64,000 bases of DNA from Lytechinus pictus. Its lineage: Eukaryota. The stretch is taken from assembly GCF_037042905.1 (NCBI RefSeq), contig NC_087263.1:9734001-9798000 (forward strand), read 5' to 3'. A program made the position numbers and the translations under genes. The notes beneath the pieces are model-generated. The model was not told where the DNA came from. It made no database searches and saw only the letters and a program-made list of their open reading frames with translations. This document shows, piece after piece, positions 45,421-60,478 of the stretch (position 1 is the stretch's first letter; each line of letters opens with the position of its first letter).

Positions 45421-45965
45421 CTTTTTTATTAAAATTCTTTACATCTATCTTGTAAAGCGATGTGGCAGAACCTGGCTATTATGTATAGAGATAAAATGCT
45501 TATAAAAGGCGTTCTTAAACAGTTGGAATGAAATTTCTTCACGGTCGCTACGTTTCCTAGCATTACATCTGAAATTATTTTATAATCGGGTTGAGGTTAG
45601 AAACATTCTTACCCATCTGCCTAGTGAATAGTTTCCAATCCCCATGCTGTCATTTTCCTTCTTCGTATGTGGCCAACGTCACATATTTTTCAAACCACCC
45701 GAAACCCCAAACCTTCTCGAAACATTGCATAAACATTTGCATCTGATTTGAATGATATTTCAACAATTCAGCTTACATGATTCTATCACTACTGATTTGA
45801 ACAATTTCTAGCCCTTTAAAATTATCAGGGGGTAATTCAATTCAAATACCACAATTCAAATTATGATTAATGTAGTGATGATTACAAGTATTGTTTTCTT
45901 ACTCTTTTCCTTACAGATGAAAAGGAAACAATGGGGAATTTATAAAAACCCATTAGAACACAACT

Positions 45966-48068
45966 ATGCAACCAATATTAGGAGTTGGGAATACTGGGCA
46001 AAGTGGCAGGAACGCGTACACCCCTAATGGAGGAGATACTCTTTCGTGTAACCTCCCTACATCACAACGACCTGATGCAGATGTAGACGACATGATGTCG
46101 ACACTGTCTCAGGGCAGCGATAACGCTCCAATATCTCCAAAGGCCAACGATGGGAACACCATCTCTAAGGAAGAATGCATCATTGAGAATCAGGTTGCCC
46201 TTCCAAGCGTTACTTTGCAGCATAGCGATGACTCAAAACGCGGGTCTACAGAACAGAGCGAATCTCTTCTTTCGGTCTCACCAGAACGATCGCTCAACCC
46301 TGACATAGACCAGGCAGATGAGGAAGGATGCAATTCGCTCTACAAAGCGGCTTCGAGAGGTCACATCGATGGGGTTGAAATCCTCGTTGAAAAAGGAGCA
46401 GACCCAAATAAAGCAAATAAAGACGGACGCAGGGCTCTCCATGTAGCTGCTGAAGAAGGACATGGAGCTATCGTAAATTTCCTCTTGGATCAGGGAGCAG
46501 ACATAAATGCCCAATGTGATCTGGGTCAGACGGCTCTCCATGCTGCAATACACAAAAATCAATGCTACTCTTCATTAATTCTTATTAGGAGCGGAGCAGA
46601 TGTTCACAGACGAGATAATGATGGAAGAAACCCTTTACACATGGCAGCAGCAGCTGGGTACACCCACATCTTTCAAAACCTCAGAGATGAAACATGTGAC
46701 ATAAATGTGAAAGATGACATGGGTCTAACAGTTCTTCATCATGCAGTGATAAATGGACATTCCAATGTTGTCCATCATCTTCTCAAGACAGGGGTTAAGG
46801 AGAGACCTTATGAAGGAGATAGTCTAAGCTTTGCGTTAACATCGTTTGGCAAGTTAGATTTGCTCCAACTTTTTATTTCCAGAGGCGGTAGTGTGAACAA
46901 GGAAAACAGCATCGGACAGAATCATCTCCACGTAGCAGCTTTGAATGGATACTTTGACATTACTAGATGTCTCGTTCAAGAAGGATGTGACATGAATAAG
47001 GAGGATTGTAAAAATTTCACACCAGTCCACGGGGCAGTGTTAAACGGACATTTGGATGTACTTCATTATCTCATAACACAGGGAGCCAAGATCACCATGT
47101 ATGATGGAAAGAGTGTTCTGCACTTGGCAGCTATCTATGGTCACCTCGACATACTCCAATACTTCATGAAGATGGGAGCTGATGCCAATGAGCTCGACGA
47201 CATTGGACAAACTCCTCTTCATGTGGCAGCAGGTGTGGGTCACTTTGACGTCGTGAAATATCTCACTAAACAAGGATCAAAGACTGACAAACAAGATCAC
47301 CTTGGTTACACTCCTCTCCACATTGCAGCCGCAAAAGGTCAACCTGAAATCGTCAAATATCTTGCAGATCAAAACTGCTACGTGGAACATTTCGATATCG
47401 AAGGTTTGACACCTTTAACTCTAGCAGCTAAACATGACCATTTAGATACTGTCAAGTGTCGTGCGGATGGAAAAGCTGATGAAGCGAACTCACTCTGTGA
47501 AGCAACATTATCTGGTCATTTGGATATTGTCAAGTTTTTAATGGAGGAAGTCGGTCGTCTAAAAAACAGAGTCGAGTCGCTAGAAGCTGCAGCTGATGAG
47601 GCGGAGCAGTATTCACGCCGCAATTGCCTGATTTTCAGTGGTATTGCTGAATCTGCAAACGAAGATACTGATGCCAAGATCATAGAGGTGTGCCAGAGGA
47701 ATCTGGGTGTTACAGTGAAACAAGAGGACATCGATCGTTCCCACCGCCTCTCCAGCCATGCTGCGCTTGAGAACAAGCTGAAGGATCCACGTAAGCCCCG
47801 GAATATCATCATCAAATTTTCCAACTACAGGGCAAGAGAGGCTGTATACGCATCTAGGGCTAAGCTGAAAGGCCTTTCAATTTACATCAATGAAAATCTA
47901 ACACGGAAGCGATCTCAGCTGTTCTGGCAAGTGAAGAAGGGAAACCTCCCGCAAGTCCACAAAGTCTGGACTCAAGACAGAAGAGTAATAGCGATGAATA
48001 AGAGTGGGAAAAGAGTTGCTATTTCAAGTGTAAAGGACCTCGGAAAACTTGATCAATTGAAGGAATGA
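45966..48068 (+). CDS. 700-aa ORF: disordered N-terminus, ~12 ankyrin repeats, fused in frame to LINE ORF1p (coiled coil-RRM-CTD)
   Basis: Repeated TPLHxAAxxGHxxxVxxL motifs to ~47540, then EQYSRRNCLIFSGIAES...DIDRSHRL...PRNIIIKF...IYINENLT. Splice acceptor ttttccttacag ends at 45916. Confidence 0.85.
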   Translation: MQPILGVGNTGQSGRNAYTPNGGDTLSCNLPTSQRPDADVDDMMSTLSQGSDNAPISPKANDGNTISKEECIIENQVALPSVTLQHSDDSKRGSTEQSESLLSVSPERSLNPDIDQADEEGCNSLYKAASRGHIDGVEILVEKGADPNKANKDGRRALHVAAEEGHGAIVNFLLDQGADINAQCDLGQTALHAAIHKNQCYSSLILIRSGADVHRRDNDGRNPLHMAAAAGYTHIFQNLRDETCDINVKDDMGLTVLHHAVINGHSNVVHHLLKTGVKERPYEGDSLSFALTSFGKLDLLQLFISRGGSVNKENSIGQNHLHVAALNGYFDITRCLVQEGCDMNKEDCKNFTPVHGAVLNGHLDVLHYLITQGAKITMYDGKSVLHLAAIYGHLDILQYFMKMGADANELDDIGQTPLHVAAGVGHFDVVKYLTKQGSKTDKQDHLGYTPLHIAAAKGQPEIVKYLADQNCYVEHFDIEGLTPLTLAAKHDHLDTVKCRADGKADEANSLCEATLSGHLDIVKFLMEEVGRLKNRVESLEAAADEAEQYSRRNCLIFSGIAESANEDTDAKIIEVCQRNLGVTVKQEDIDRSHRLSSHAALENKLKDPRKPRNIIIKFSNYRAREAVYASRAKLKGLSIYINENLTRKRSQLFWQVKKGNLPQVHKVWTQDRRVIAMNKSGKRVAISSVKDLGKLDQLKE

Positions 48069-51000
48069 GACAACAATATCAATCAAATTCACTGAACTGT
48101 AATACTTGGTCTGCTTGAGCACACAGGCGTTCCTGTTTACTATTTGCTTTTAAATTGCACTATTAAATATACGATTTGTTTTTAATAACGTTAATCACTA
48201 GAACTTGGTTCTTATTTTATTGAATATTTGTATAAAATTACATTCATTACTTACACGTAATACTTTTCACTTGTTTTAACCTATTTTCAACATAAGATTT
48301 AATGATTAAATACCCATGTTCAATTTGTAATAAATCTGTTAAAATAAATCAAAAGGCTTTGTTATGCACTGTATGTTCACAGTGGGTGCATATAGTTTGT
48401 GGCGGGGTCTCAAGAGAGACCTATGATTCAGATGAACTGTTTGAAAATTGGCAGTGCCCGAAATGTATTCTCCAAAGTGTATTACCTTTTTGGAATGATC
48501 CTGATCTATCTACTGAAGGCATGTATAACTAATAATATTTCTGTCGACGCACATGATGATAGGTCAACCGAAACTAATGATTTTGCTCTAAAAGATATTA
48601 AAGGTATAAAATTAGCTCATCTTAATGTCAGAAGCATTGTTAATAAAGTTGCTGATTTACAATGTTGGCTGAATAATAACCCTTATGATCTACTAGGAGT
48701 GTCAGAAACATGGTTAACAAAAGAACATTCTGATAGCTTGATTTCTGTTAAAGGTTATAAGTTTGAGAGGAAGGATAGATGTACTCATGGAGGTGGAGTG
48801 AGATGTTTTATATCAGAAAATCTATCGTATATAAGGAGATTGGATCTTGAATATGTTGCCTTAGAAAAAAATTTGGTTGGAGTTGCAACGTAGCAATAGT
48901 AGCTCATTATTAATTGGTATATTGTATAGAAAACCGGATAATCATTTAGATTTTTTTTACAGTCTTGAAAGTAATCTTGAGAAATTGTATAGAGTTACAA
49001 ACAACGTCATCCTTCTTGGTGATTTTAACTGTAATATGCAAACCGTAAATAATCTTTCTAGAAAAGTTTCCAGTCTCCTTACTACAGTGCAAATGACACA
49101 GGTTATATCTGCACCCACTAGAATTTCACCACATAGCCAGTCAGTAATCGATTTGGTATGTATTTCTGATGCGCTTGTTGACAATATTATTAAGTCAGGA
49201 GTGCAGTAAGCTGGACTTAGTGATCACTCTGTGATTTTTACTGCAATTAAAGGGAAACATCAATCCCTTTCTCCGAAAATAACTAAATGTCGTTCATTCA
49301 AGTACTTTGACAGTGAGAAATTTAAAGATGATGTAAGGAAAGTTGATTGGCATGAGTTTTATTCCTGTGGGACTGACGTTGAAAAATTGTGGCACTACTT
49401 TAAAGGACAAGTCCACCCCATCAAAAACTTGATTTGAATAAAAAGAGAAAAACTCAACAAGCAAAATACTGAAAATTTTATCAAAATCGGGTGTAAAATA
49501 AGAAAGTTATGGCATTTTAAAGTTTCGCTTCATTTCACAAAACAGTGATATGCACATCTCGGTCGGTATGCAAATGAGGAACTGATGACATCACTCACTC
49601 ACTATTTCTTTTGTATTTTATTATATGAAATATGAAATATTTTTATTTTCTCGTCATTGTCATGTGAAATGAAGTTTCATTCCTCCCTGAACATGTGGAA
49701 TTCCATTATTTCAACATTTTGTGCTTCAGGCAAGGAGGTCCTAATTGTCAAATTCGTAAAAATTGAAATATTGTATAATTCAAACAATAAAAAACAAAAG
49801 AAATAGTGAGTGAGTGACATCATCGACTCTCTCATTTGGATGTAACTGGCTCATTCATATAACTATTTTGTTAAAAATAAGCGAAACTTTGAAATGTCAT
49901 AACTTCCTTATTTTACATCCGATTTAGATGAAATTTTCAGCATTGTGCTTGTCTGATTTTTCTCGATTGATTCAAATCAACATTTTTCTGAGGTGGACTT
50001 GACCTTTAAAAACACACTCCTGGACATTTGTGACAGGCATGCCCCCGTGATATCAGTGCGGCAAAAACAAAGAGGGGTACCTTGGATAAATGATGATTTT
50101 TTGGTGTTACCACGCGAAAGGGATTATTATCGAAAGCAATTTAGAAAAACAAGATTAATTTATTGGTGGAATAAATTTCAGTTTTCCCGTAACAGAGCTA
50201 ATAACTTGATTAAAAATTTGAAAAAGAAGTATTATCAGGACAAATTTAAGGACTGCGAAAATGACATAAAAAAGAACTGGAACATTTTATCGAAGTTTAT
50301 ACCTAAGAAAAATAAAACCACGAGTCATGATGTTAAATTAACAATTGATAATGATCAAATACCTAACAATGAAATAGCTCACGTTCTAAACAAAGCCTTT
50401 AATGAAGTCGGAGAGCAATACATGATAAATTGTATAAGTACTTAAATGTAAATGATCTACTTGCAAATTGTCAGTCTGGCTTCAGACCGTCTTATTCTAC
50501 TGCCACTTGTCTAACTGAGATTACAGATTTTTTGTATTATAAATTGGACTGAAAACATGTTACTGGTTGTATTTTTTTGGACTTACGCAAAGCTTTTGAT
50601 GTTATTCCTCACAATTTTATACTTGCAAAACTTAAGTACTATGGTATTACTGGCAATGAATACAACTGCATGGAATCGTATTTAACAGACAGAAGGCAAT
50701 TTGTAATGATTAACAGTTGTCGCAGTGAATTTTTGAAGATAAAATCAGGTGTCCCACAAGGATCTATACTGGGTCCACTGATATTTTGTATTTTTATTAA
50801 TGACATGTGTAATTTGAAATTGCATGTACATTATAAAATGTCTCTTTACGCTGATGATACCGCCATTTTTTAATCACGGTGAATCAATTAAGGAGGTACA
50901 AAAGTATCTGCAAGATGATTTTGATTCAATAAGTAAATGGCTAGACTTAAATAATATGCATTTACACCCGCAAAAAACAAAAGCCATGGTATTTGGTCAA

Positions 51001-51940
51001 AAGAAAAAGTTGAGGGGTGCTCATTTGTCAGTGAAATTCAGGAACGTACAATTAGAAAATGTAAAAAAGATTAAATACTTAGGTGTCATGCTCGATACGG
51101 GCTTGACTTGGTGCGAACATATTACTAATATCGTTTGTAAAATATATCGGGCAATAGGTTGTGTAAGGCGGATTAAGCACTTAATGTCCTTTGATATCAT
51201 GAAGAAGCTGTACTTTTCTATGATTTTACCTTACATTGATTACTGTATTACATCTTGGGGAAGCAGTGCAAAAATACATTTAGATAAGACACAAAAACTT
51301 CAAAATAAATATGCCAGAATGCTTTTGAAAAAAAGATTATAATACATCACAAATTTCTTTGTTGCAGTCACTGAAGTGGCAATCAGTAGATCAGCGTATA
51401 AAATATAAGTATTGTGTACTTGTATATAAAATAATGAATGATTTAGTTCCAAATTATTTAAAACCTTTAGTATGTAAACGGCCCGTGAAATACAGGACAC
51501 GGTTTTCTTTACGATGCCCGCTTCAGCTTCCCAAAGCTAGAATTGAACATAAAAGAAAATCTTTCGCATATGTCGGACCCAAATTTTTTAATGTACTTCC
51601 TTCAAATTTACAAGTTTGTACCTCCTTGTTAGTTTTTAAAAAAATATGCAAAGCCTTTCATATGAATTGATATAGAGCGAAATGATATTCTATTGATTTA
51701 CAATGCTATGTATGTTAAAATTGTCACTTCCCACTCTATATTTTGGTGTTAATTGTTTCTGATGTTAGATATTTTGTATTTTGTATTTTTGATGTTGTTT
51801 GTTGTTGTTGTAGTTGTTCATAGTTATCTTGACATGTATTTTAAACTGCAGGGCGCCTTTGTAAAGCATTTTTAAAAACTGAACAGGCCTACCCTGCAGT
51901 ATAATATAAATAAAACAAAAATTAATAAATAAATATAAAT
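47541..51940 (+). mobile_element. 5'-truncated CR1/L2-group LINE inserted in the ankyrin exon; ORF2 with N-terminal PHD finger, APE and RT (disrupted)
   Basis: CSIC...CTVC..WVHIVC...WQCPKC PHD; HLNVRS, VSETWL, LGDFN, DLRKAFD, GVPQGSILGP and YADDT motifs; AATAAA-rich tail at 51901-51940. No TSD seen. Confidence 0.9.
49404..50005. mobile_element. TTAA-targeting (Kolobok-like) MITE inside LINE ORF2
   Basis: TTAA|AGGACAAGTCCACC...GGTGGACTTGACCT|TTAA; removal restores LWHYFKNTLLDICDRHAP. Confidence 0.92.
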
Positions 51941-53036
51941 CGCTTTGAACTTCGTCTTGCAGCTTCTAATGGGAACTTAGATACCGTGAAGTATCTCGTG
52001 CAACAAGGAGTTGATATAAACAGCAACGATGAGAAAGGCTGGACATCGTTGGAGTGTGCAATCCAGAATAACAATTGTGAGGTCATAGACTATCTGCTTA
52101 CGAATGGAGCTAAAGCGAACCAAGGAAATGAAGAGAGTCCACTCTACATGGCATCTAGACTTGGCCACTTCGATGCAGTAAACGTTCTTATTTCAAGAGG
52201 GATTTCGGTAAATGCTGAGAGTCACAGAGGACAGATTCCTCTTCACGCTGCTGCTACCACCGGCAGAATTCAAGTCGTTGAAACCCTCATTCAAAGGGGA
52301 TCAGATTTGAACAAGACTGACATCGACGGTTGCACACCACTTCACGCAGCGGTCCAAAAACGGCCACCTCGAAGTCGTTAGGTATCTCATATGGAAAGGA
52401 GCGATCGACATCAAATATAGAGGAATGACCTCTCTACATTGCAGCTCAAATTGGTCACCTATATACATAGTCGATCTCCTCCTTTCTAATGGCGCTGATG
52501 TAAATGAGGAAAATGACACTGGGTGTATTCCTCTTCATGCTGCAGCAGCCAATGGTTCACTTGAGATAGTCCAAAAGCTCATCAATCAAGAATCAGACGT
52601 GAACAAGATGGCCGACAATGGATGGACTCCATTACACGCTGCAGTCCAGAGTGGCAGGTTAGATGTCGTACGTAATATGATTTCCCATGGAGCTACAAAA
52701 ACGAGGTTCGAAGGAATGACTGTTCTCTACATTGCTGCCCAGCGTGGTCACATAGACTTAATCGAGTACTTTGGCACCACAGGCTGTGATGTAAATGACG
52801 GAACAGATAGCGGCAAAACTCCTCTTTTGGCTGCCTGTTATAATGGTGCATTAGATTCTGTGGAGATGCTGGTCACCCAGGATGCCTGTATTAATCATGC
52901 TGACAGAAACAAAAGGACACCAGTCCATGCAGCGGCAAAAGAAGGACACTTGCCTGTCGTTACCTACCTGGTAGAAAATGGAGCAGACACAAATGCTAAA
53001 GATACAGATGGAATAACTCCACTTCAAGCAGCATAA
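51941..53036 (+). pseudogene. Continuation of the ankyrin-repeat exon (~11 more repeats), disabled
   Basis: Ankyrin motifs continue; +1 frameshift in the A-run at ~52356-52360 and TAA at 53034-53036. Confidence 0.88.
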
Positions 53037-56000
53037 GATGGAGACAATGAAGATGTCAAACAATGTCTCCTCCGGTTAACAGCAAAAGCGCAAGATGAAC
53101 GGCATAACGATATTAAGAAGACAGATGGAATGACACCCCTTCAAGCAGCAGAAGATGCAGGTCTTCAAGATGTCCAACAATGTCTCATTCAGTTCAGAGG
53201 AGGAGTGCAAGATGAACGGCATAAAGGTACAGAGAAGACAGATGGAATGACACCACTTCAAGCCGCAGAAGATACAGGTCATTAAGATGTCCAAAAATGT
53301 CTCATTTAGTTCAGAGGAGGAGTGCAAGATGAACGGCATAATGGTACAGAGAAGACAGATTGAATGACACCACTTCAAGCCGCAGAAGATGCAGGTTATC
53401 AAGATGTCCAGCAATGTCTCATTCAGTTCAGAGGAGGAGTGCAAGATGAACGGCATAAAGGTACAGAGAAGACAGATTGAATGACATCACTTCAAGCCGC
53501 AGAAGATGCAGGTCATCAAGATGTCCAAAGATGTCTCATTCATTTCAGAGGAGGAGTGCAAGATGAACGGCATAAAGGTACAGAGAAGACAGATGGAATG
53601 ACACCACTTCAAGCCACAGAAGATACATGTCATCAAGATGTCCAAAAATGTCTCATTCAGTTCAGAGGAGGAGTGCAAGATGAACGGCATAATGATACAG
53701 AGAAGACAGATGGAATGACATCACTTCAAGCCGCAGAAGATACAGGTCATCAAGATGTCCAAAAATGTCTCATTCAGTTCAGATCAAAAGTGCAAGATGA
53801 AGAGCATAAAGGTACAGAGAAGACAGATGGAATGACATCACTTCAAGCCGCAAAAGATACAGGTCATCAAGATGTCAAAAAATGTCTCATTCAGTTCAGA
53901 GGAGGAGTGCAAGATGAACGGCATAATGGTACAGAGAAGACAGATGGAATGACATCACTTCAAGCCGCAGAAGATGCAGGTCATCAAGATGTCCAACAAT
54001 GTCTCATTCAGTTCAGAGGAGGAGTGCAAAATGAAGGGCATAAATGTACAGAGAAGACAGATGGAATGACACCACTTCAAGCCGCAGAAGATACAGGTCA
54101 TCAAGATGTCCAAAAATGTCTCATTCAGTTCAGAGGAGGAGTGCAAGATGAACGGCATCATGGTACAGAGAAGACAGATGGAATGACATCACTTTAAGCC
54201 GCAGAAGATACAGGTCATCAAGATGTCCAAAAATGTCTCATTCATTTCAGAGGAGGAGTGCAAGAAGAACGGCATAAAGGTACAGAGAAGACAGTTGAAA
54301 TGACATCACTTCAATCAGGAGAAGGTGCAGGTCATCAAAATGTCCAAAAATGTCTCATTCAGTTCAGATCAAAAGTGCAAGATGAAGAGCATAAAGGTAC
54401 AGGGAAGACGGATGGAATGACATCACTTCAAGCCGCAGAAGATACAGGTCATCAAGATGTCCAAAAATATCTCATTCAGTTCAGAGGAGGAGTGCAAGAT
54501 GAACGGCATAATGGTACAGAGAAGACAGATGGAATGACATCACTTCAAGCCGCAGAAGATGCAGGTCATCAAGATGTCCAGCAATGTCTCATTCAGTTCA
54601 GAGGAGGAGTGCAAAATGAAGGGCATAAATGTACAGAGAAGACAGATGGAATGACACCACTTCAAGCCGCAGAAGATACAGGTCATCAAGATGTCCAAAA
54701 ATATCTCATACATTTCAGAGGAGGAGTGCAAGAAGAACGGCATAAAGGTACAGAGAAGACGGATGGAATGACATCACTTCAAGCCGCAGAAGATACAGGT
54801 CATCAAGATGTCCAAAAATGTCTCATTCAGTTCAGAGGAGGAGTGCAAGATGAACGGCATAAATGTACAGAGAAGACAGATGGAATGACACCACTTCAAG
54901 CCGCAGAAGATACAGGTCATCAAGATGTCAAAAAATGTCTCATTCAGTTTAGAGGAGGAGTGCAAGATGAACGGCATAAAGGTACAGAGAAGACAGATGA
55001 AATGACATCACTTCAAGCAGGAGAAGGTGCAGGTCATCAAGATCTCCAACAATTTCTCTTTCAGTTCAGAGGAGGAGTGCAAGAAGAACGGCATAAAGGT
55101 ACAAAGACAGATGAAATGACATCACTTCAAGCCGCAGAAGATGCAGGTCATCAAGATGTCCAACAATGTCTCATTCAGTTCAGAGGAGGAGTGCAAGATG
55201 AAGAGCATAAAGGTACAGAGAAGACGGATGGAATGACATCACTTCAAGCCGCAGAAGATACAGGTCATCAAGATGTCCAAAAATGTCTCATTCAGTTCAG
55301 AGGAGGAGTGCAAGATGAACGGCATAATGGTACAGAGAAGACAGATGGAATGACATCACTTCAAGCCGCAGAAGATGCAGGTCATCAAGATGTCCAGCAA
55401 TGTCTCATTCAGTTCAGAGGAGGAGTGCAAAATGAAGGGCATAAATGTACAGAGAAGACAGATGGAATGACACCACTTCAAGCCGCAGAAGATACAGGTC
55501 ATCAAGATGTCAAAAAATGTCTCATTCAGTTCAGAGGAGGAGTGCAAGATGAACGGCATAAAGGTACAGAGAAGACAGATGAAATGACATCACTTCAAGC
55601 AGGAGAAGGTGCAGGTCATCAAGATCTCCAACAATTTCTCTTTCAGTTCAGAGGAGGAGTGCAAGAAGAACGGCATAAAGGTACAAAGACAGATGAAATG
55701 ACATCACTTCAAGCAGGAGAAGATGCAGGTCATAAAGATCTCCAACAATTTATCTTGCAGTTCAGAGGAGGAGTGCAAGATGAACGGCATAAATATGCTA
55801 AGAAGACAGATCGAATGACATCACTTCAAGCCGCAGACGATGCAGGTCATGATGATGTCCAAAAATGTCTCATTCATTTCAGAGGAGGAGTGCAAGATGA
55901 ACGGCATAAAGGTACAGAGAAGACAGATGGAATGACATCACTTCAAGCAGCAGAAGATACAGGTCATCAAGATGTCCAAAAATGTCTCATTCAGTTCATT

Positions 56001-56460
56001 ACAGAGAAGACAGATGGAATGACATCACTTAAAGCCGCAGAAGATGCAGGTCATCAAGATGTCCAAAAATGTCTCATTCAGTTCAGAGGAGGAGCGCAAG
56101 ATGAACGGCATAAAGGTACAGATAAGACAGGTTGAATGACGTCACTTCAAGCAGCAGAAGATACAGGTCATCAAGATGTCCAAAAATGTCCCATTCAGTT
56201 CAGTGCAAGATGAAAGGCATAAAGGTACAGAGAAGACAGATGGAATTACACCACTTCAAGCCGCAGAAGTTGCAGGTCATCAAGATGCCCAAAAATGTCT
56301 CTTTCAGTTGAGAGGAGTGCAAGATGAACGGCATAAAGATACTAAGAAGACAGATGGAATGACACCTCTTCAAGCAGCAGGAGATGCAGGTCATGAAGAT
56401 GTCCAACAATGTCTCATTCAGTTAAGAACAGAAGTGCACGATGGACGGTATGATGATACA
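53005..56460 (+). repeat. Coding-type tandem array, ~30 x 117 bp (39-aa ankyrin-derived unit)
   Basis: Unit TDGMTPLQAAEDTGHQDVQKCLIQFRGGVQDERHKGTEK; several units contain stops. Confidence 0.95.
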
Positions 56461-57133
56461 GATGACAGCTTTAGATCTGACGGAAACTGCCCAGAGATGG
56501 TCCGAGGTTCTGGGATGTCCAAAGTGTCCGCTTATGATAGATTGTCTGGTATTAACGGAGAGTCCGACTACCCAATGCCCTTAAATGTCACGACGGCTTC
56601 TATTCCTATGTAAGTAAGTATACTTAACGCTTGCTTAAAATGATCTTCACACCCTACAAGAATACCGTAACAGAATAAAAAGCAAGGCATTAGAAATATA
56701 AAATCATTGTAATCTCAAAGTGTTGATTACATTTAGTCTCTTTTAGTGATAAAACTAAATGTAAATACATTTTCCGAATATAAATGCAGCATTCTTAAAT
56801 CATATTCGAACAAGCAGCCAAGTCACACTACATCAAGTCCTCAACTACTTACATCTGGTCCGGTTCCTAACCCATAATGCAGTATTATGAGCAGTGTAAA
56901 CTTGTAATATGTAACCACGTGAATGATAAATTCGCTACTCAATACTCTATACAGCAAAAACTATTCAACCTGCAAAAAATTTAGTACCTTTCATTTCAAC
57001 AAAATGTTCCATCTTCGCAATCTAGTTACTTAGACAATTTTATTAGATTAAATCCATTAGTCCTAGTTTTTAAAAGACAACTACAAAATATCATACTTGA
57101 ACATGACATGTCATGTTTATGTTTCACCCACAG

Positions 57134-57198
57134 AATCCCTGGCGAACGAACCCTGATAGCCTTTCCCGACATATCAAGACAACTATTCGGCCTCCTCG
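57134..57198 (+). CDS. Linker exon 1a (65 bp, NPWRTNPDSLSRHIKTTIRPP)
   Basis: tttcacccacag acceptor, GTAAGA donor, phase 0 to 2; paralogue at 57953-58017. Confidence 0.75.
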
Positions 57199-57533
57199 GT
57201 AAGAGCCAGTACTTTGAGGCTTTTTGTGTTGAGACATAAATATACCACCTTACATTATCTTACATATAGAAGTTGAAATTGAATGAATTCATATACAAGC
57301 AAGAAAATAAAATGTTTGATAAAAGGGGATCACCAAAATAGCAATAGCTGCTAATAGTGTGACGCACCCTGTACATAATAATATGTAGCTCTTCCAAATA
57401 AACAGATACATACTTATTACCTAATGTATTCCCAATGAGTACATTCAATATACTGACAAATAATTATATTAGTACATTCACGAAAATCACCCTAATTTGC
57501 ATATAACCTATGCTATTTCGTACTATGTTTCAG

Positions 57534-57648
57534 TGAGTCATGTATCGCCAAACCAAAAACACAACTCCATGGAGGTGAGGTACCAGCTACTGATGATTTT
57601 GCTATCAACATAGAAAACGGCGCAGGAGATCCAAAATCCGTAATAAAG
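57534..57648 (+). CDS. Linker exon 2a (115 bp, ESCIAKPKTQLHGGEVPATDDF...)
   Basis: atgtttcag acceptor, AAG|GTAGCC donor, phase 2 to 0; open in the frame set by exon 1a. Confidence 0.75.
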
Positions 57649-57952
57649 GTAGCCTTTTATACGATTACCGGGAATAGGGCAGCCACAAAGATCTCCGTGT
57701 TGTATAAATCGTTATGATCCATTGTAATTAAGGAATTAAGGGCATGTCCTAATATATTATAGTTTCACTATACAAATGAAGTAATGACACTCTTGGCTCC
57801 TCCGCTAGGATCTATTATCCATGTTTTCGTGTAATCTAATGTCATTTAATTAAATATAACTTTAACAGATTTAATAATTCGTTAGGCCTATTTTTAAAAG
57901 ACAGCTACGCAATACCATTCTTGAACATGATATTCTTACGTTTCACCCACAG

Positions 57953-58017
57953 AATCCCCGGCGAACGAACCGTGATAGCCTTTCCCGACAAATCAAGACA
58001 GCTATTCGTCCTACAAG
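57953..58017 (+). CDS. Linker exon 1b (65 bp)
   Basis: Duplicate of exon 1a with intact splice sites and open frame. Confidence 0.75.
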
Positions 58018-58397
58018 GTAAGAGCCTGTGGGTTGAGGCCTTTTGTGTTTAAGACATAAATAAACCACCTTACATTATCTTACCTGATGAAGTAGAAATA
58101 GAAACTTTATTACCGAAAATATTGTTGTACAAGCAAGAAAATAAAATATTTGATAAAAGGGGATCACAAAATAACAATACCTGCTAATAGGATGTGGCAC
58201 CTTGTATATGATAATGTAAAATAAACAGATATACACCTAAATGAATTACTTAAGGGGTACATTCAATATACTGACAACTAATTCATAACAGTGCATTTAG
58301 GAATGTCTTCGTCAAACGTGTTTTTAAGACATTCACCTCAGAAATGAAATTCACCCCAATTTGTATTTAACCTATTCTATTTCGTATTATGTTTTAG

Positions 58398-58521
58398 TGA
58401 GTCATGTGTCGCCAAACCAAAAACACAACTTCATGGCGGTGATGTACCAGCTACGGATGATTTCCCTGTTATCCGCATGACCGATGAAAACGACGCAGTA
58501 GATCCAAAACCGGAAATAAAG
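58398..58521 (+). CDS. Linker exon 2b (124 bp)
   Basis: Duplicate of exon 2a with a frame-preserving 9-bp length difference; AAG|GTAACC donor, phase 0. Confidence 0.75.
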
Positions 58522-58743
58522 GTAACCTTTTATAGGATTACCTGAAATAGGACAGCCACGCAGATCACTGTGTTGCATAAATTGTTGTCATCAAATGAAA
58601 TTAGGAAAGCAAGGCCATCCCCTAAAACATTTCTAAAGTACGCCCCTGACTTTTTAAAACCCAAGATGCATTTTATTGCCAATTTTATGCAATACTCTAC
58701 CATACATGTAGCTTTGTTGGTTTATTGTTAAGTTTAGTTCTGA

Positions 58744-59280
58744 TTAAATGAGAATCCAACCCAAACAAAAGCTTGTTTTTAAAGAGAAATGAAAAATGAG
58801 ACAAGTTGATATGTGAAAGTTTGAACAATATCGGACAAACAATAAAAAAGTTATCATTTTACCAATGAAGACTTCAAATTGGCCGCATATGTGATGTCAT
58901 AGCGATGTAAGGCAAGGACTACTCTTCCATGTACTCCAATACAGAAATATTTCTGAGATAACATTTTATCCGAAGTTTGTACTTCATATTATATTTTCTT
59001 TCATGAGGATATAAAATGATATACTACCTGGGTTATATTTAGATTACTGCCCCTGGGGAATGGGTACTACAGCGAAAACCATAAATACCTGATAATTAAG
59101 GTAGGAAAGTTGTCCTTGCTCAGTGCCAAAATTTATTTACCCAGTTACCAATTTGGAATATACACCGTATCCGTATATCAATTTTGCCCGATTTCTTTCA
59201 AACTTCCAGCATTCTGTTTTATTTATTTTTCTTCTTCCCAACACAGCATTTTATGACCAAGGCTGGATTCTGATGTTCAT
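58744..59280. mobile_element. Degenerate Kolobok-like MITE in the last intron
   Basis: TTAAATGAGAATCCAACC...GGCTGGATTCT imperfect TIR; interior motifs resemble the other TTAA MITEs. Confidence 0.5.
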
Positions 59281-59539
59281 GTTGCATTTATTTATTGCAA
59301 ATTTATCAGTGACATGGAACAATGAAATTCGTTTACTCTCTTGTTTGACTTATGTTCAGATCCCTCGATCCTTTGCAACATGTCATCAATTAGATATCGT
59401 TTGATTAACAAAGTAACATATCGTAATACAAGATGACGACATGTGAAAAAAAAAAATAAATGAACCTCCGATCCAAGTTCACCACATGGCATGAATAATT
59501 CCTATTGTTACTTTTGACCATTGTATACTCTTCTTGCAG

Positions 59540-60478
59540 AGCGAACGACGGAACATTGAGAATGGCCATTCGATCCCGACCCTCCTCTGTTGGCATTATT
59601 GGGCGATTCTCGCTTTGGCCTTCTTCTCTGCTTGTCCAATACTTGTAGCAGGCAACTCAAGGTGGACCGAACCGGTTACGTTGGATGTGGGTACTCGTGG
59701 CGTAGTCACATTCCATCTTCAGCGACCATCCAGTACACTACAGTTTTCTCTTTTCTACACGATTCAGTTCGGATCAAAGGGTCGTCCTTTCTGCATAGAT
59801 GGACAATATGATGTTGATGGCTTCAAAAATCCTCAAATATCAAGATTCACTACCACTGTCATAGACATAGGTACATCTCCCTGTGTGAATATGACAATAG
59901 ATGACGTTGATACCATAGACGGAGATCAGTACATACTCACGGCTGTGTGGCGTAATTTGGAGAACGTTCTGTATGATACTCAAAAGAAGGAGGTAGTTGT
60001 ACAGCGTCCTCCCGGTCCGGCAGATTGCTTCATCACTTTGATTGATAGTGAGTATCCGTATGAAGTACATTGTTGGGCCAAGACTGGACGTATGCCAACC
60101 AAACTGACGTGCTTCCAGAACGACCGAGAGCTCGTCAAAGTGCAGATCAGTACAGGTAAGAGGCACACCACCACAGCTATCTTCCTCCTACCCCATACGA
60201 CACATTTCTCCTGCTGTTCAAATGCCAAAACATCTACCGTAGATGCTGCAACCTGCAACGACTTTGAGTGGCCCTCTGGTTATTCTGGTATTTCTAGTAC
60301 AGAGGCTACCAGTAGGAGCATGCTTGCCGATGAACAATATGATTGGCCTACTGATCCGACAACTAATACCGATACAATAGGGTCTGGAGCTTGTAGACCA
60401 TTCATGATTCCATCACAATGGCACTTTCTGTACCTGCTCATTTATCTTCTTGTCTTTGTTAAAACTATAATTTGTTAG
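59540..60478 (+). CDS. Terminal exon: hydrophobic helix, V-like and C2-like Ig domains, Ser/Thr stalk, C-terminal hydrophobic (GPI-like) tail
   Basis: ctcttcttgcag acceptor in phase 0; WAILALAFFSACPILVAG; SRF...VNMTIDDV..IDGDQY; HCWAKTGRMPTKLTC...FSCC; GSGA...WHFLYLLIYLLVFV. Intact frame. Confidence 0.8.
   Translation, partial: SERRNIENGHSIPTLLCWHYWAILALAFFSACPILVAGNSRWTEPVTLDVGTRGVVTFHLQRPSSTLQFSLFYTIQFGSKGRPFCIDGQYDVDGFKNPQISRFTTTVIDIGTSPCVNMTIDDVDTIDGDQYILTAVWRNLENVLYDTQKKEVVVQRPPGPADCFITLIDSEYPYEVHCWAKTGRMPTKLTCFQNDRELVKVQISTGKRHTTTAIFLLPHTTHFSCCSNAKTSTVDAATCNDFEWPSGYSGISSTEATSRSMLADEQYDWPTDPTTNTDTIGSGACRPFMIPSQWHFLYLLIYLLVFVKTIIC

What the first reader, a model, noticed from the sequence alone, without database searches (positions are those of the whole stretch)
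45917..60478. Spliced gene model predicts an ankyrin-inside / Ig-outside membrane protein with two membrane anchors
Seen: the ORF track shows the ankyrin and Ig ORFs as unrelated, but four small exons bridge them. Exons 57134-57198, 57534-57648, 57953-58017 and 58398-58521 have canonical splice sites, alternate phases 0-2-0-2-0, stay open, and splice in frame into 59540 (...PEIK|SERRNIENG...). The last exon has no in-frame Met before its hydrophobic helix, so that helix is probably an internal membrane anchor. Two Ig-like domains, a Ser/Thr stalk and a GPI-like tail follow. Inference: more than 20 cytoplasmic ankyrin repeats tied to a type II-oriented Ig ectodomain anchored at both ends (the topology of tetherin/BST-2). 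I do not recognise this architecture from named families; it could be a lineage-specific recognition or immune receptor family. Caveat: the phase-0 donor of the big exon (56614) directly follows a TAA, so this copy looks disabled and the ankyrin-to-linker join is the weakest link.
Basis: partly seen in the sequence, partly recalled or inferred. Interest (0 to 1): 0.85.

Follow-up and report, generated by a model that had tools for sequence, protein, structure and literature searches.

The report
Decayed ankyrin–Ig membrane gene copy
The proposed splicing of a huge ankyrin-repeat exon onto a membrane helix and two-Ig-domain exon is real for this sea-urchin gene family, since RNA shows it in a sister copy, but the copy in this window is a pseudogene broken by a young LINE, frameshifts and stop codons.

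Summary
The four small exons (65, 115, 65 and 124 nt) have AG/GT borders and read in frame into the last exon at 59540. TAA sits on the last codon of the big exon.

The genome is Lytechinus pictus. Four sister copies on the same chromosome keep the order ankyrin exon, linker exons, Ig exon. Three have CAA, GAA or CAG where the window has TAA.

In one sister copy, spliced RNA contigs from two studies join the ankyrin exon donor to the linkers and then to the Ig exon. The resulting 1610-codon frame matches a 1608-aa RefSeq model with a generic ankyrin name. Fused models also exist in L. variegatus and S. purpuratus, and the fused Ig modules form one clade.

AlphaFold2 and Foldseek place the last exon with IgV-IgC ectodomains such as butyrophilin, nectin-like and PD-L1. 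Pfam finds nothing in it.

It carries a 4.4-kb young LINE inside the ankyrin exon, three frame changes and several stops.

Ankyrin inside and Ig outside is likely. The tetherin-like double anchor is unproven: the helix descends from a cleavable signal peptide and keeps a V-A-G cleavage motif. The architecture is unusual and uncharacterised, and automatic models of it already exist in public databases.

The parts
45917..47543 (+). 5' part of the big ankyrin-repeat exon (frame 3). A conserved acceptor lies just upstream. The homologous start ATG runs into a stop after 4 codons, and the next ATG is at 45966.
   Evidence: tblastn of the sister copy's ankyrin frame: aa 2-533 match 45930-47552 at 66% identity. 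Pfam Ank families reach E 1e-77. Acceptor comparison.
47544..51938 (+). Young LINE (non-LTR retrotransposon) inserted in the ankyrin exon. It carries an ORF1-like part, a PHD finger, an endonuclease, a reverse transcriptase (itself frameshifted) and an A/T-rich 3' end.
   Evidence: Pfam PHD, Exo_endo_phos_2 and RVT_1. The sister copy is continuous across the insertion site. At least 30 dispersed genomic copies are 95-99% identical.
51939..53237 (+). Ankyrin repeats resume in frame 2 up to about 52357, then continue in frame 3. About 97 residues are missing relative to the sister copy, and there is a stop at 53034.
   Evidence: tblastn; stop list; Pfam Ank.
53004..56462 (+). Tandem array of a 117-bp (39-aa) ankyrin-derived repeat, about 29 copies against 2 in a sister copy. 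It is interrupted by stops at 53283-53478, 54195 and 56133, and by a frame change near 56135.
   Evidence: Tandem Repeats Finder; Pfam Ank_2 E 6e-34 on the 54258-56132 translation; stops.
56236..56613 (+). Non-repeat tail of the big exon. It ends in TAA (56611-56613) directly before the GTAAGT donor at 56614. Sister copies have CAA, GAA or CAG at that codon, and the closest L. variegatus model reads Glu.
   Evidence: DNA alignment of four copies; L. variegatus model ends ...ASIPME|NSW; the tail has matches only at the sister loci.
57134..57198 (+). Linker exon A1 (65 nt, phase 0 in, 2 out).
   Evidence: AG/GT borders and open frame. The homologous exon is spliced in RNA contigs of a sister copy.
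57534..57648 (+). Linker exon B1 (115 nt).
   Evidence: 79% identical to the L. variegatus model.
57953..58017 (+). Linker exon A2 (65 nt), a duplicate of A1.
58398..58521 (+). Linker exon B2 (124 nt), a duplicate of B1. It holds the only in-frame Met upstream of the helix.
59540..59650 (+). Start of the terminal exon: a basic stretch (SERRN...) followed by a hydrophobic helix ending P-I-L-V-A-G. This is an internal signal or signal-anchor sequence.
   Evidence: AF2 helix at residues 12-31. It aligns with the N-terminal signal peptides of stand-alone relatives. The acceptor is used in RNA of a sister copy.
59651..60004 (+). Ig domain 1, V-like. It has the D-x-G-x-Y motif but lacks the canonical Cys pair, and carries one N-glycosylation sequon (NMT).
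   Evidence: AF2 pLDDT above 90 and Foldseek matches to butyrophilin, nectin-like and PD-L1 chains. Pfam V-set hits in distant relatives. Sequon.
60005..60274 (+). Ig domain 2, C-like, with six family-invariant cysteines (C163, C178, C191, C225, C226, C239).
   Evidence: Alignment A1; fold matches.
60275..60478 (+). Disordered Ser/Thr/Pro-rich stalk, then a conserved G-S-G-A, a spacer of about 10 residues and a 19-residue hydrophobic C-terminus ending the protein (GPI-signal-like), then the stop codon.
   Evidence: pLDDT below 50 for residues 250-291 and a helix at 293-311; conservation of GSGA in the close copies; composition.

Best explanation
The window holds a decayed copy of a gene from an echinoid family. 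The family's intact members are single transcripts with this layout:
- one very large exon of ankyrin repeats (about 900-1100 residues);
- one to several duplicated pairs of small exons coding a low-complexity linker;
- a terminal exon coding a basic stretch, a hydrophobic helix, an IgV-like and an IgC-like domain, a Ser/Thr-rich stalk and a GPI-signal-like hydrophobic end.

Shown:
- the exon structure;
- the splicing, in a sister copy;
- the open fused frame in several copies and species;
- the Ig fold.

Inferred:
- The helix, with positive charges on its N-terminal side, inserts N-in/C-out when it emerges from the ribosome. The ankyrin array and linker then stay cytoplasmic, and the Ig domains face the lumen and cell surface.
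- The protein works as a surface recognition or adhesion module tied, at least during biogenesis, to a cytoplasmic ankyrin scaffold.

Open: whether the helix stays as a second anchor (tetherin-like) or is cut off by signal peptidase.

In the window copy the ankyrin part can no longer be translated. It carries a young LINE insertion, three frame changes, several stops and TAA on the last codon before the donor. The linker and Ig exons are still open, and I found no protein model for them.
For: - Exon borders and frame.
- Sister copies on the same chromosome keep the order ankyrin exon, linkers, Ig exon. They have a sense codon before the same GTAAGT donor.
- RNA-derived contigs of runs X1 and X6 (two studies) cover exons and not introns. 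They show CT..AC joints (GT..AG on the gene strand) for all seven introns from the ankyrin exon to the Ig exon of copy L031.
- The exons joined at those joints give 1610 open codons. This equals RefSeq model P0001 of 1608 aa.
- A second intact copy equals P0006/P0153, which maps 100% on L032.
- Fused ANK plus Ig-module models also exist in L. variegatus and S. purpuratus.
- All ANK-fused modules fall in one clade of 20 rows, support 99.
- Fold: mean pLDDT 80.9, and Foldseek E about 1e-9 to 1e-10 to butyrophilin, nectin-like-4 and PD-L1 ectodomains. The atlas features also point to the Ig superfamily.
- Damage in the window copy.
- No identical protein model for the window's Ig exon. Run X1 holds only 0.06 of the window stretch's words against 0.33 for the sister copy.
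Against: - No RNA was laid on the window copy itself, so its own transcription is unknown.
- No single contig spans the whole sister gene. The chain is built from overlapping pieces.
- X1 and X6 are not on record as RNA. Their origin is inferred from the joints and the empty introns.
- Two raw RNA-seq runs gave almost no reads.
- The transcribed sister copy includes a 98-nt mini-exon that adds a second hydrophobic helix. By simple rules this would put its Ig module inside the cell.
- One S. purpuratus model was shortened from 1341 to 434 aa between annotation releases.
- Topology, the GPI anchor and function rest on sequence features only.
Confidence: 0.85

Rival explanations
1. Cleaved precursor. 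The internal helix acts as a true signal peptide and signal peptidase cuts after V-A-G. The gene then yields two products: a GPI-anchored two-Ig surface protein, and an ankyrin protein left with a C-terminal membrane helix, which may later be released. The mature Ig protein would not be anchored at both ends.
For: - The helix aligns with the N-terminal signal peptides of stand-alone family members that start with Met.
- Its strictly hydrophobic core is no longer than theirs (median 12 against 13 residues, p = 0.86).
- The end P-x-x-V-A-G or V-S-G, with small residues at -1 and -3, is conserved in all fused copies and species.
Against: - The uncharged stretch around the helix is longer in N-extended members (median 23 against 17). 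That is long enough to span a membrane, though the sequences are related and so not independent.
- Cleavage of signal sequences lying more than 1000 residues inside a cellular protein is unusual (general knowledge).
- No predictor or experiment was run.
Confidence: 0.4
2. Uncleaved double anchor. The helix is a type II signal anchor and the C-terminus receives GPI, so the Ig ectodomain is held at both ends as in tetherin/BST-2, with the ankyrin array inside the cell.
For: - Positive charges precede the helix (SERRN, KKRK in Diadema).
- Uncharged stretch of 20-35 residues in fused members.
- C-terminal hydrophobic end with no cytoplasmic tail, behind a conserved G-S-G-A.
- Continuous open frame kept across species.
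Against: - Same data as for the cleaved-precursor reading: signal-peptide ancestry and a retained cleavage motif.
- GPI addition is not tested.
- The sister copy with two helices does not fit a simple model.
Confidence: 0.35
3. Two separate genes in this window. The ankyrin gene ends at TAA 56611. An independent small gene (linker exons plus Ig exon) starts from its own promoter, using the Met in linker exon 4, and makes an ordinary secreted or GPI-anchored Ig protein.
For: - The linker and Ig exons are intact while the ankyrin part is wrecked.
- An in-frame Met lies about 30 residues before the helix.
- RefSeq has short models that start inside linker exons for other copies (P0005, P0003).
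Against: - Sister copies have a sense codon at the TAA position and their RNA uses that donor.
- No protein model and almost no RNA words for this copy.
- Some short models include intron read-through, which suggests ab initio artefacts.
- dN/dS of the window's IgC part is higher than among the other copies (0.54-0.83 against 0.15-0.46). This fits relaxed constraint.
Confidence: 0.12

Closest known systems
Butyrophilin / B7 / nectin-like IgV-IgC cell-surface proteins
   Same: The two-domain V-then-C ectodomain fold gives the best Foldseek matches: BTN3A1, BTN2A1, Necl-4 and PD-L1, at E 5e-10 to 1e-8. In both cases a membrane-bound ectodomain is coupled to a cytoplasmic protein-interaction domain.
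   Different: Those proteins are type I, with an N-terminal signal peptide and a cytoplasmic domain after the membrane helix. Here the cytoplasmic domain (an ankyrin array) comes first and the C-terminus is GPI-signal-like. Sequence identity is 12-15%. Pfam gives no hit for this sequence. The canonical V-domain cysteine pair is absent.
Tetherin / BST-2
   Same: The possible topology: an N-terminal cytoplasmic part, a membrane helix, an ectodomain and a C-terminal GPI signal.
   Different: There is no homology. Tetherin has a short cytoplasmic tail and a coiled-coil ectodomain. Here there are about 1000 or more residues of ankyrin repeats and two Ig domains. Whether the helix stays attached is unknown.
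Proteins with N-terminal ankyrin arrays before the first membrane helix (TRPA1, NOMPC)
   Same: A long cytoplasmic ankyrin array is made first, and a later internal hydrophobic segment does the membrane insertion (general knowledge). This shows that the order is feasible.
   Different: Those are multi-pass ion channels. This is a single-pass, or cleaved, protein with an Ig ectodomain.
RefSeq automatic models named 'ankyrin-1-like' and 'serine/threonine-protein phosphatase 6 regulatory ankyrin repeat subunit B-like' in L. pictus, L. variegatus and S. purpuratus
   Same: They are the same gene family and the same fused architecture.
   Different: The names describe only the ankyrin part. The Ig module, helix and tail are not annotated. 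The window copy has no such model.

Membership tests
Ankyrin-repeat proteins | Tandem 33-residue ANK repeats recognised by the Pfam Ank models | tested here: met
   Ank_2 E 1e-77 (45966-48065), 9e-28 and 4e-43 (51986-53033), and 6e-34 for the 39-aa array. In this copy the repeats are spread over broken frames.
Immunoglobulin superfamily (V-C ectodomain) | Two beta-sandwich Ig folds in tandem | tested here: met
   AF2 model with pLDDT above 90 over residues 40-245. More than 500 PDB matches at E below 0.001, topped by butyrophilin, nectin-like and PD-L1 ectodomains. AFDB clusters named Ig-like.
Immunoglobulin superfamily (V-C ectodomain) | Sequence match to Pfam Ig, V-set or C-set models | tested here: not met
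   No Pfam family for the window exon or for P0001:1296-1608. Only distant family members (P0018, P0029) reach V-set.
Immunoglobulin superfamily (V-C ectodomain) | Canonical B-strand and F-strand cysteine pair in the V domain | tested here: not met
   The F-strand motif reads D-x-G-x-Y-I with no Cys. The invariant cysteines all lie in domain 2.
Tetherin-like double-anchored proteins | Uncleaved N-terminal membrane helix together with a C-terminal GPI anchor on one polypeptide | not testable with these tools
   Both hydrophobic segments are present. Cleavage and GPI addition need SignalP, NetGPI or experiments.
Tetherin-like double-anchored proteins | Homology to BST-2 (coiled-coil ectodomain) | tested here: not met
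   The ectodomain is two Ig folds, and no coiled coil is present.
GPI-anchored proteins | C-terminal hydrophobic stretch reaching the last residue, preceded by a short spacer and small omega-site residues | tested here: met
   G-S-G-A, then a spacer of about 10 residues, then 19 hydrophobic residues to the end. GSGA or DSGA is conserved in the close copies. More distant relatives instead have a helix plus a charged tail. This was read by eye; no predictor was run.
Functional gene (this copy) | Uninterrupted reading frame across all coding exons | tested here: not met
   LINE insertion, frame changes 3 to 2 to 3 to 1, eight in-frame stops including the last codon, and a broken homologous start.

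The most novel reading that the evidence does not exclude
Echinoids have evolved, by exon shuffling, an Ig-superfamily surface protein built the 'wrong way round'. A giant cytoplasmic ankyrin array (spectrin repeats in Diadema) is translated first. A former signal peptide then serves as an internal membrane anchor, and the V-C ectodomain is held by a second, GPI anchor. This would be a double-anchored, cytoskeleton-linked recognition receptor with no counterpart among described families. The variant reading is a cellular 'polyprotein' that signal peptidase splits into a membrane-tethered ankyrin protein and a GPI-anchored Ig protein.
Probability: 0.35. Interest if true: 0.75.

Novelty: new variant of a known kind. 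Interest (0 to 1): 0.55.

Why it matters
Almost all membrane proteins of the Ig superfamily are type I. A conserved family that places more than 1000 residues of ankyrin repeats ahead of the membrane helix and ends in a GPI-like signal is therefore an unusual way to couple a surface recognition module to the cell interior.

The family raises a clean cell-biology question: what happens to a former signal peptide once it lies deep inside a protein?

The family is expanding and decaying quickly in sea urchins. This cluster holds five copies: two intact and three damaged, with linker exons amplified 1 to more than 6 times. That is typical of lineage-specific recognition genes.

The public names of these models hide the Ig part. 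Surveys of urchin immune or adhesion genes that rely on names or Pfam will miss them.

For the window itself the result is ordinary: a pseudogene.

Tried and rejected
- Pfam on the Ig exon and on the linker: no hit.
- RNA runs for the window's own stretch: only X1 holds any of it, with 0.06 of the words.
- Raw RNA-seq runs X8 and X9: one partial read each on the sister copy, which is uninformative.
- Search for a protein model of the window's Ig exon: none identical among proteins of 172-546 aa or among the fetched proteins.
- Diversifying selection: pairwise dN/dS is about 0.5 in the Ig domains and about 1 only in the stalk. This gives no support for an arms-race signature.
- Helix length as a test of anchor against signal peptide: core length is equal and the uncharged stretch is longer in fused members, but the sequences are related. 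Inconclusive.
- The idea that the 700-aa ORF 45966-48068 is a functional ankyrin–LINE ORF1 fusion: rejected. The LINE is a young dispersed repeat, and the sister copies are continuous across the site.
- Retrocopy as the source of the spliced contigs: rejected. The ankyrin tail matches only the four cluster loci in the genome.
- Literature: two full-text searches found nothing on this family. This does not prove that none exists.
Full report
**What is in the window.**
The region is animal DNA of 31-45% G+C. A large frame with ankyrin repeats starts after a conserved acceptor at 45916/45917. Alignment with the intact ankyrin frame of a sister copy shows how it runs:
- The window follows that frame from 45930 to about 47543.
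- About 4.4 kb of foreign sequence then interrupts it.
- It resumes at about 51941 in another frame and shifts frame again near 52357, with about 97 residues missing.
- It then runs into a 117-bp tandem array (53004-56462, about 29 copies).
- It shifts frame once more near 56135.

In-frame stops lie at 53034, 53283, 53307, 53361, 53478, 54195, 56133 and 56611.

**The foreign sequence is a young LINE.**
The inserted piece carries a PHD finger, an endonuclease and a reverse transcriptase. The genome holds at least 30 copies at 95-99% identity, spread over many chromosomes. The 700-aa open frame at 45966-48068 is therefore ankyrin read by chance into the LINE's first ORF, not a captured domain.

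It is correct in every detail that I could check.
- The exons 57134-57198, 57534-57648, 57953-58017 and 58398-58521 have AG/GT borders and lengths of 65, 115, 65 and 124 nt. They read openly into 59540.
- They are two copies of one duplicated exon pair.
- The big exon ends ATG TAA followed by GTAAGT.
- The last exon has no Met before its helix.

**Sister copies.**
The genome (812 Mb) holds at least 54 matches to the Ig exon. The four closest (66-78% identical) lie within 300 kb on the same chromosome.
- The non-repeat tail of the ankyrin exon occurs only four times in the genome. Each time it lies just upstream of one of these Ig exons, on the same strand, with linker exons between.
- At the codon before the shared GTAAGT donor, the sister copies read CAA, GAA and CAG.
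- The closest L. variegatus protein reads Glu there (...ASIPME|NSW).

**RNA evidence.**
I laid four runs on the sister copy L031, whose gene is on the minus strand. Contigs of X1 and X6, from two studies, cover the exons and leave intron bins at zero depth. They show seven CT..AC joints, which are GT..AG on the gene strand:
- 4471>4122, from the ankyrin exon donor to the first linker exon;
- 4058>3905, 3791>3489, 3449>3302, 3179>2700 and 2603>1912, between linker exons;
- 1798>1309, onto the acceptor just before SERRN.

One X6 contig holds 1332 nt of the ankyrin exon, the whole 65-nt exon and part of the next. Joining the exons at these joints gives 1610 open codons with a single terminal stop.

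Caveats on this evidence:
- A retrocopy is excluded, because the ankyrin tail has no fifth genomic match.
- The runs are not on record as RNA, so their nature is inferred from these joints.
- No single contig spans the whole gene.
- Two raw RNA-seq runs gave almost no reads.

**Public models.**
A search with the tail of the sister ankyrin frame found a 1608-aa RefSeq protein of Lytechinus pictus on a contig of exactly this chromosome's length. It is identical to my spliced frame and is named 'serine/threonine-protein phosphatase 6 regulatory ankyrin repeat subunit B-like'. The same search found a 1564-aa L. variegatus protein.

A profile of the Ig module, run against 1.84 billion representatives, found 658 proteins.
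- Most are about 300 aa, stand-alone, with their own Met and signal peptide.
- Several are long with the module at the C-terminus. Of these, P0004, P0006, P0007, P0012, P0043 and P0155 carry ankyrin repeats.
- The named long models come from L. pictus and S. purpuratus.
- P0006 ('ankyrin-1-like isoform X2') maps 100% on a second sister copy. It has one linker pair and one internal helix.
- In a FastTree of 149 modules, all ankyrin-fused ones fall within one clade of 20 rows with support 99. This is consistent with one fusion event before Lytechinus and Strongylocentrotus split.
- Two Diadema models carry spectrin repeats instead of ankyrin repeats.
- All named hits in my two samples are echinoid, except one generic molluscan titin-like protein.

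**The last exon.**
Pfam finds nothing in it. The AlphaFold2 model, built with 25 family sequences, has a mean pLDDT of 80.9 and exceeds 90 over residues 40-245. It shows a helix at 12-31, two beta-sandwich domains, a disordered stretch at 250-291 and a terminal helix at 293-311.

Foldseek places the model with IgV-IgC ectodomains. The top PDB matches are BTN3A1/BTN2A1, nectin-like-4 and PD-L1, at E 5e-10 to 1e-8. The AlphaFold DB clusters it hits are named Ig-like or butyrophilin-like. Language-model features agree.

The family alignment shows six invariant cysteines, all in domain 2. Domain 1 has no canonical V-domain cysteine pair but keeps a D-x-G-x-Y motif. Two distant members reach Pfam V-set.

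The tail is G-S-G-A, then a spacer of about 10 residues, then 19 hydrophobic residues to the very end. The small-residue motif is conserved in the close copies. More distant relatives have a membrane helix plus a charged tail instead.

**Topology (inferred).**
Basic residues precede the helix in all fused models: SERRN, KRR, and KKRK in Diadema. The Ig part has a conserved glycosylation sequon, conserved cysteines and a GPI-like end. Ankyrin inside and Ig outside is therefore the natural reading.

Whether the helix stays attached is open.
- For cleavage: the helix is homologous to the N-terminal signal peptides of the stand-alone relatives. It keeps a proline-containing end with small residues at -3 and -1 (V-A-G or V-S-G). 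Its hydrophobic core is no longer than theirs (12 against 13 residues).
- For a retained anchor: its uncharged stretch is longer (23 against 17 residues). The sequences are related, so this is not an independent test.

I rate cleavage and retention about equal.

One fact fits neither reading. The transcribed sister copy includes a 98-nt mini-exon that duplicates the start of the Ig exon, and this gives a second helix 38 residues before the real one.

**Status of the window copy.**
- The ankyrin part cannot be translated.
- The linker and Ig exons are intact, with all invariant cysteines present.
- No identical protein model exists among those I could search.
- Run X1 holds 0.06 of this stretch's words against 0.33 for the sister copy.
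- dN/dS of the window's IgC part against the other copies is higher than among those copies (0.54-0.83 against 0.15-0.46).

I read it as a pseudogene in a birth-and-death cluster. Of the five copies, two are intact. One has its ankyrin exon split over three frames. One has that exon collapsed to about 120 codons and its linker pair amplified. The fifth is this one.

**Novelty.**
The fused architecture already sits in RefSeq under names that describe only the ankyrin part. Two full-text searches found no paper on it. It is not a new fold or a new kind of domain. It is an unusual arrangement of known domains, hence 'new variant of a known kind'.

The scan had already noted two overlapping stretches in this window: the ORF that runs into the LINE, and the 39-aa array. 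The second agrees with my results. For the first, I do not support the 'capture' reading.

Noticed in passing
L031:2603-2700 (minus strand; G000:C19:10030603-10030700): A 98-nt mini-exon that partly duplicates the 5' end of the Ig exon (basic stretch plus helix) is spliced into the RNA contigs and into RefSeq model P0001. That protein therefore has two hydrophobic helices 38 residues apart, which does not fit a simple Ig-outside topology.
   Followed up: partly
G000:C19:9838629-9848087 (L034 end, L035): In the next copy downstream, the linker exon pair with its introns is amplified as a tandem unit of about 1.83 kb at least five times. The ankyrin exon there is collapsed to about 120 codons. 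RefSeq model P0003 (717 aa) consists of linker repeats plus the Ig module.
   Followed up: partly
P0103 and P0047 (Diadema antillarum models): The same helix plus Ig module follows spectrin repeats (Nesprin-like) instead of ankyrin repeats. This could be a second, independent fusion of a cytoskeletal repeat array to this module, or a gene-model fusion.
   Followed up: partly
window 47544-51938: The LINE inside the ankyrin exon belongs to a very young family, with at least 30 copies at 95-99% identity. The window copy lacks about 137 bp that the other copies have, between positions 718 and 719 of the query (about window 48277).
   Followed up: partly
window 57288-57480: The intron between linker exons A1 and B1 holds a short dispersed repeat with matches on many chromosomes (70-90% identity).
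   Followed up: no
P0157 versus P0008 (S. purpuratus XP_011669521 versions 1 and 2): The same locus was modelled as a 1341-aa ankyrin-fused protein in one release and as a 434-aa protein starting at internal Met 978 in the next. The automatic evidence for the fusion is therefore not uniform across species.
   Followed up: partly
window 53004-56462 versus L031:4630-4864: The 39-aa ankyrin-derived repeat is present about 29 times in the window copy, about 6-7 times in the L. variegatus relative and only twice in the intact sister copy. The array expanded strongly in the copy that is now dead.
   Followed up: partly
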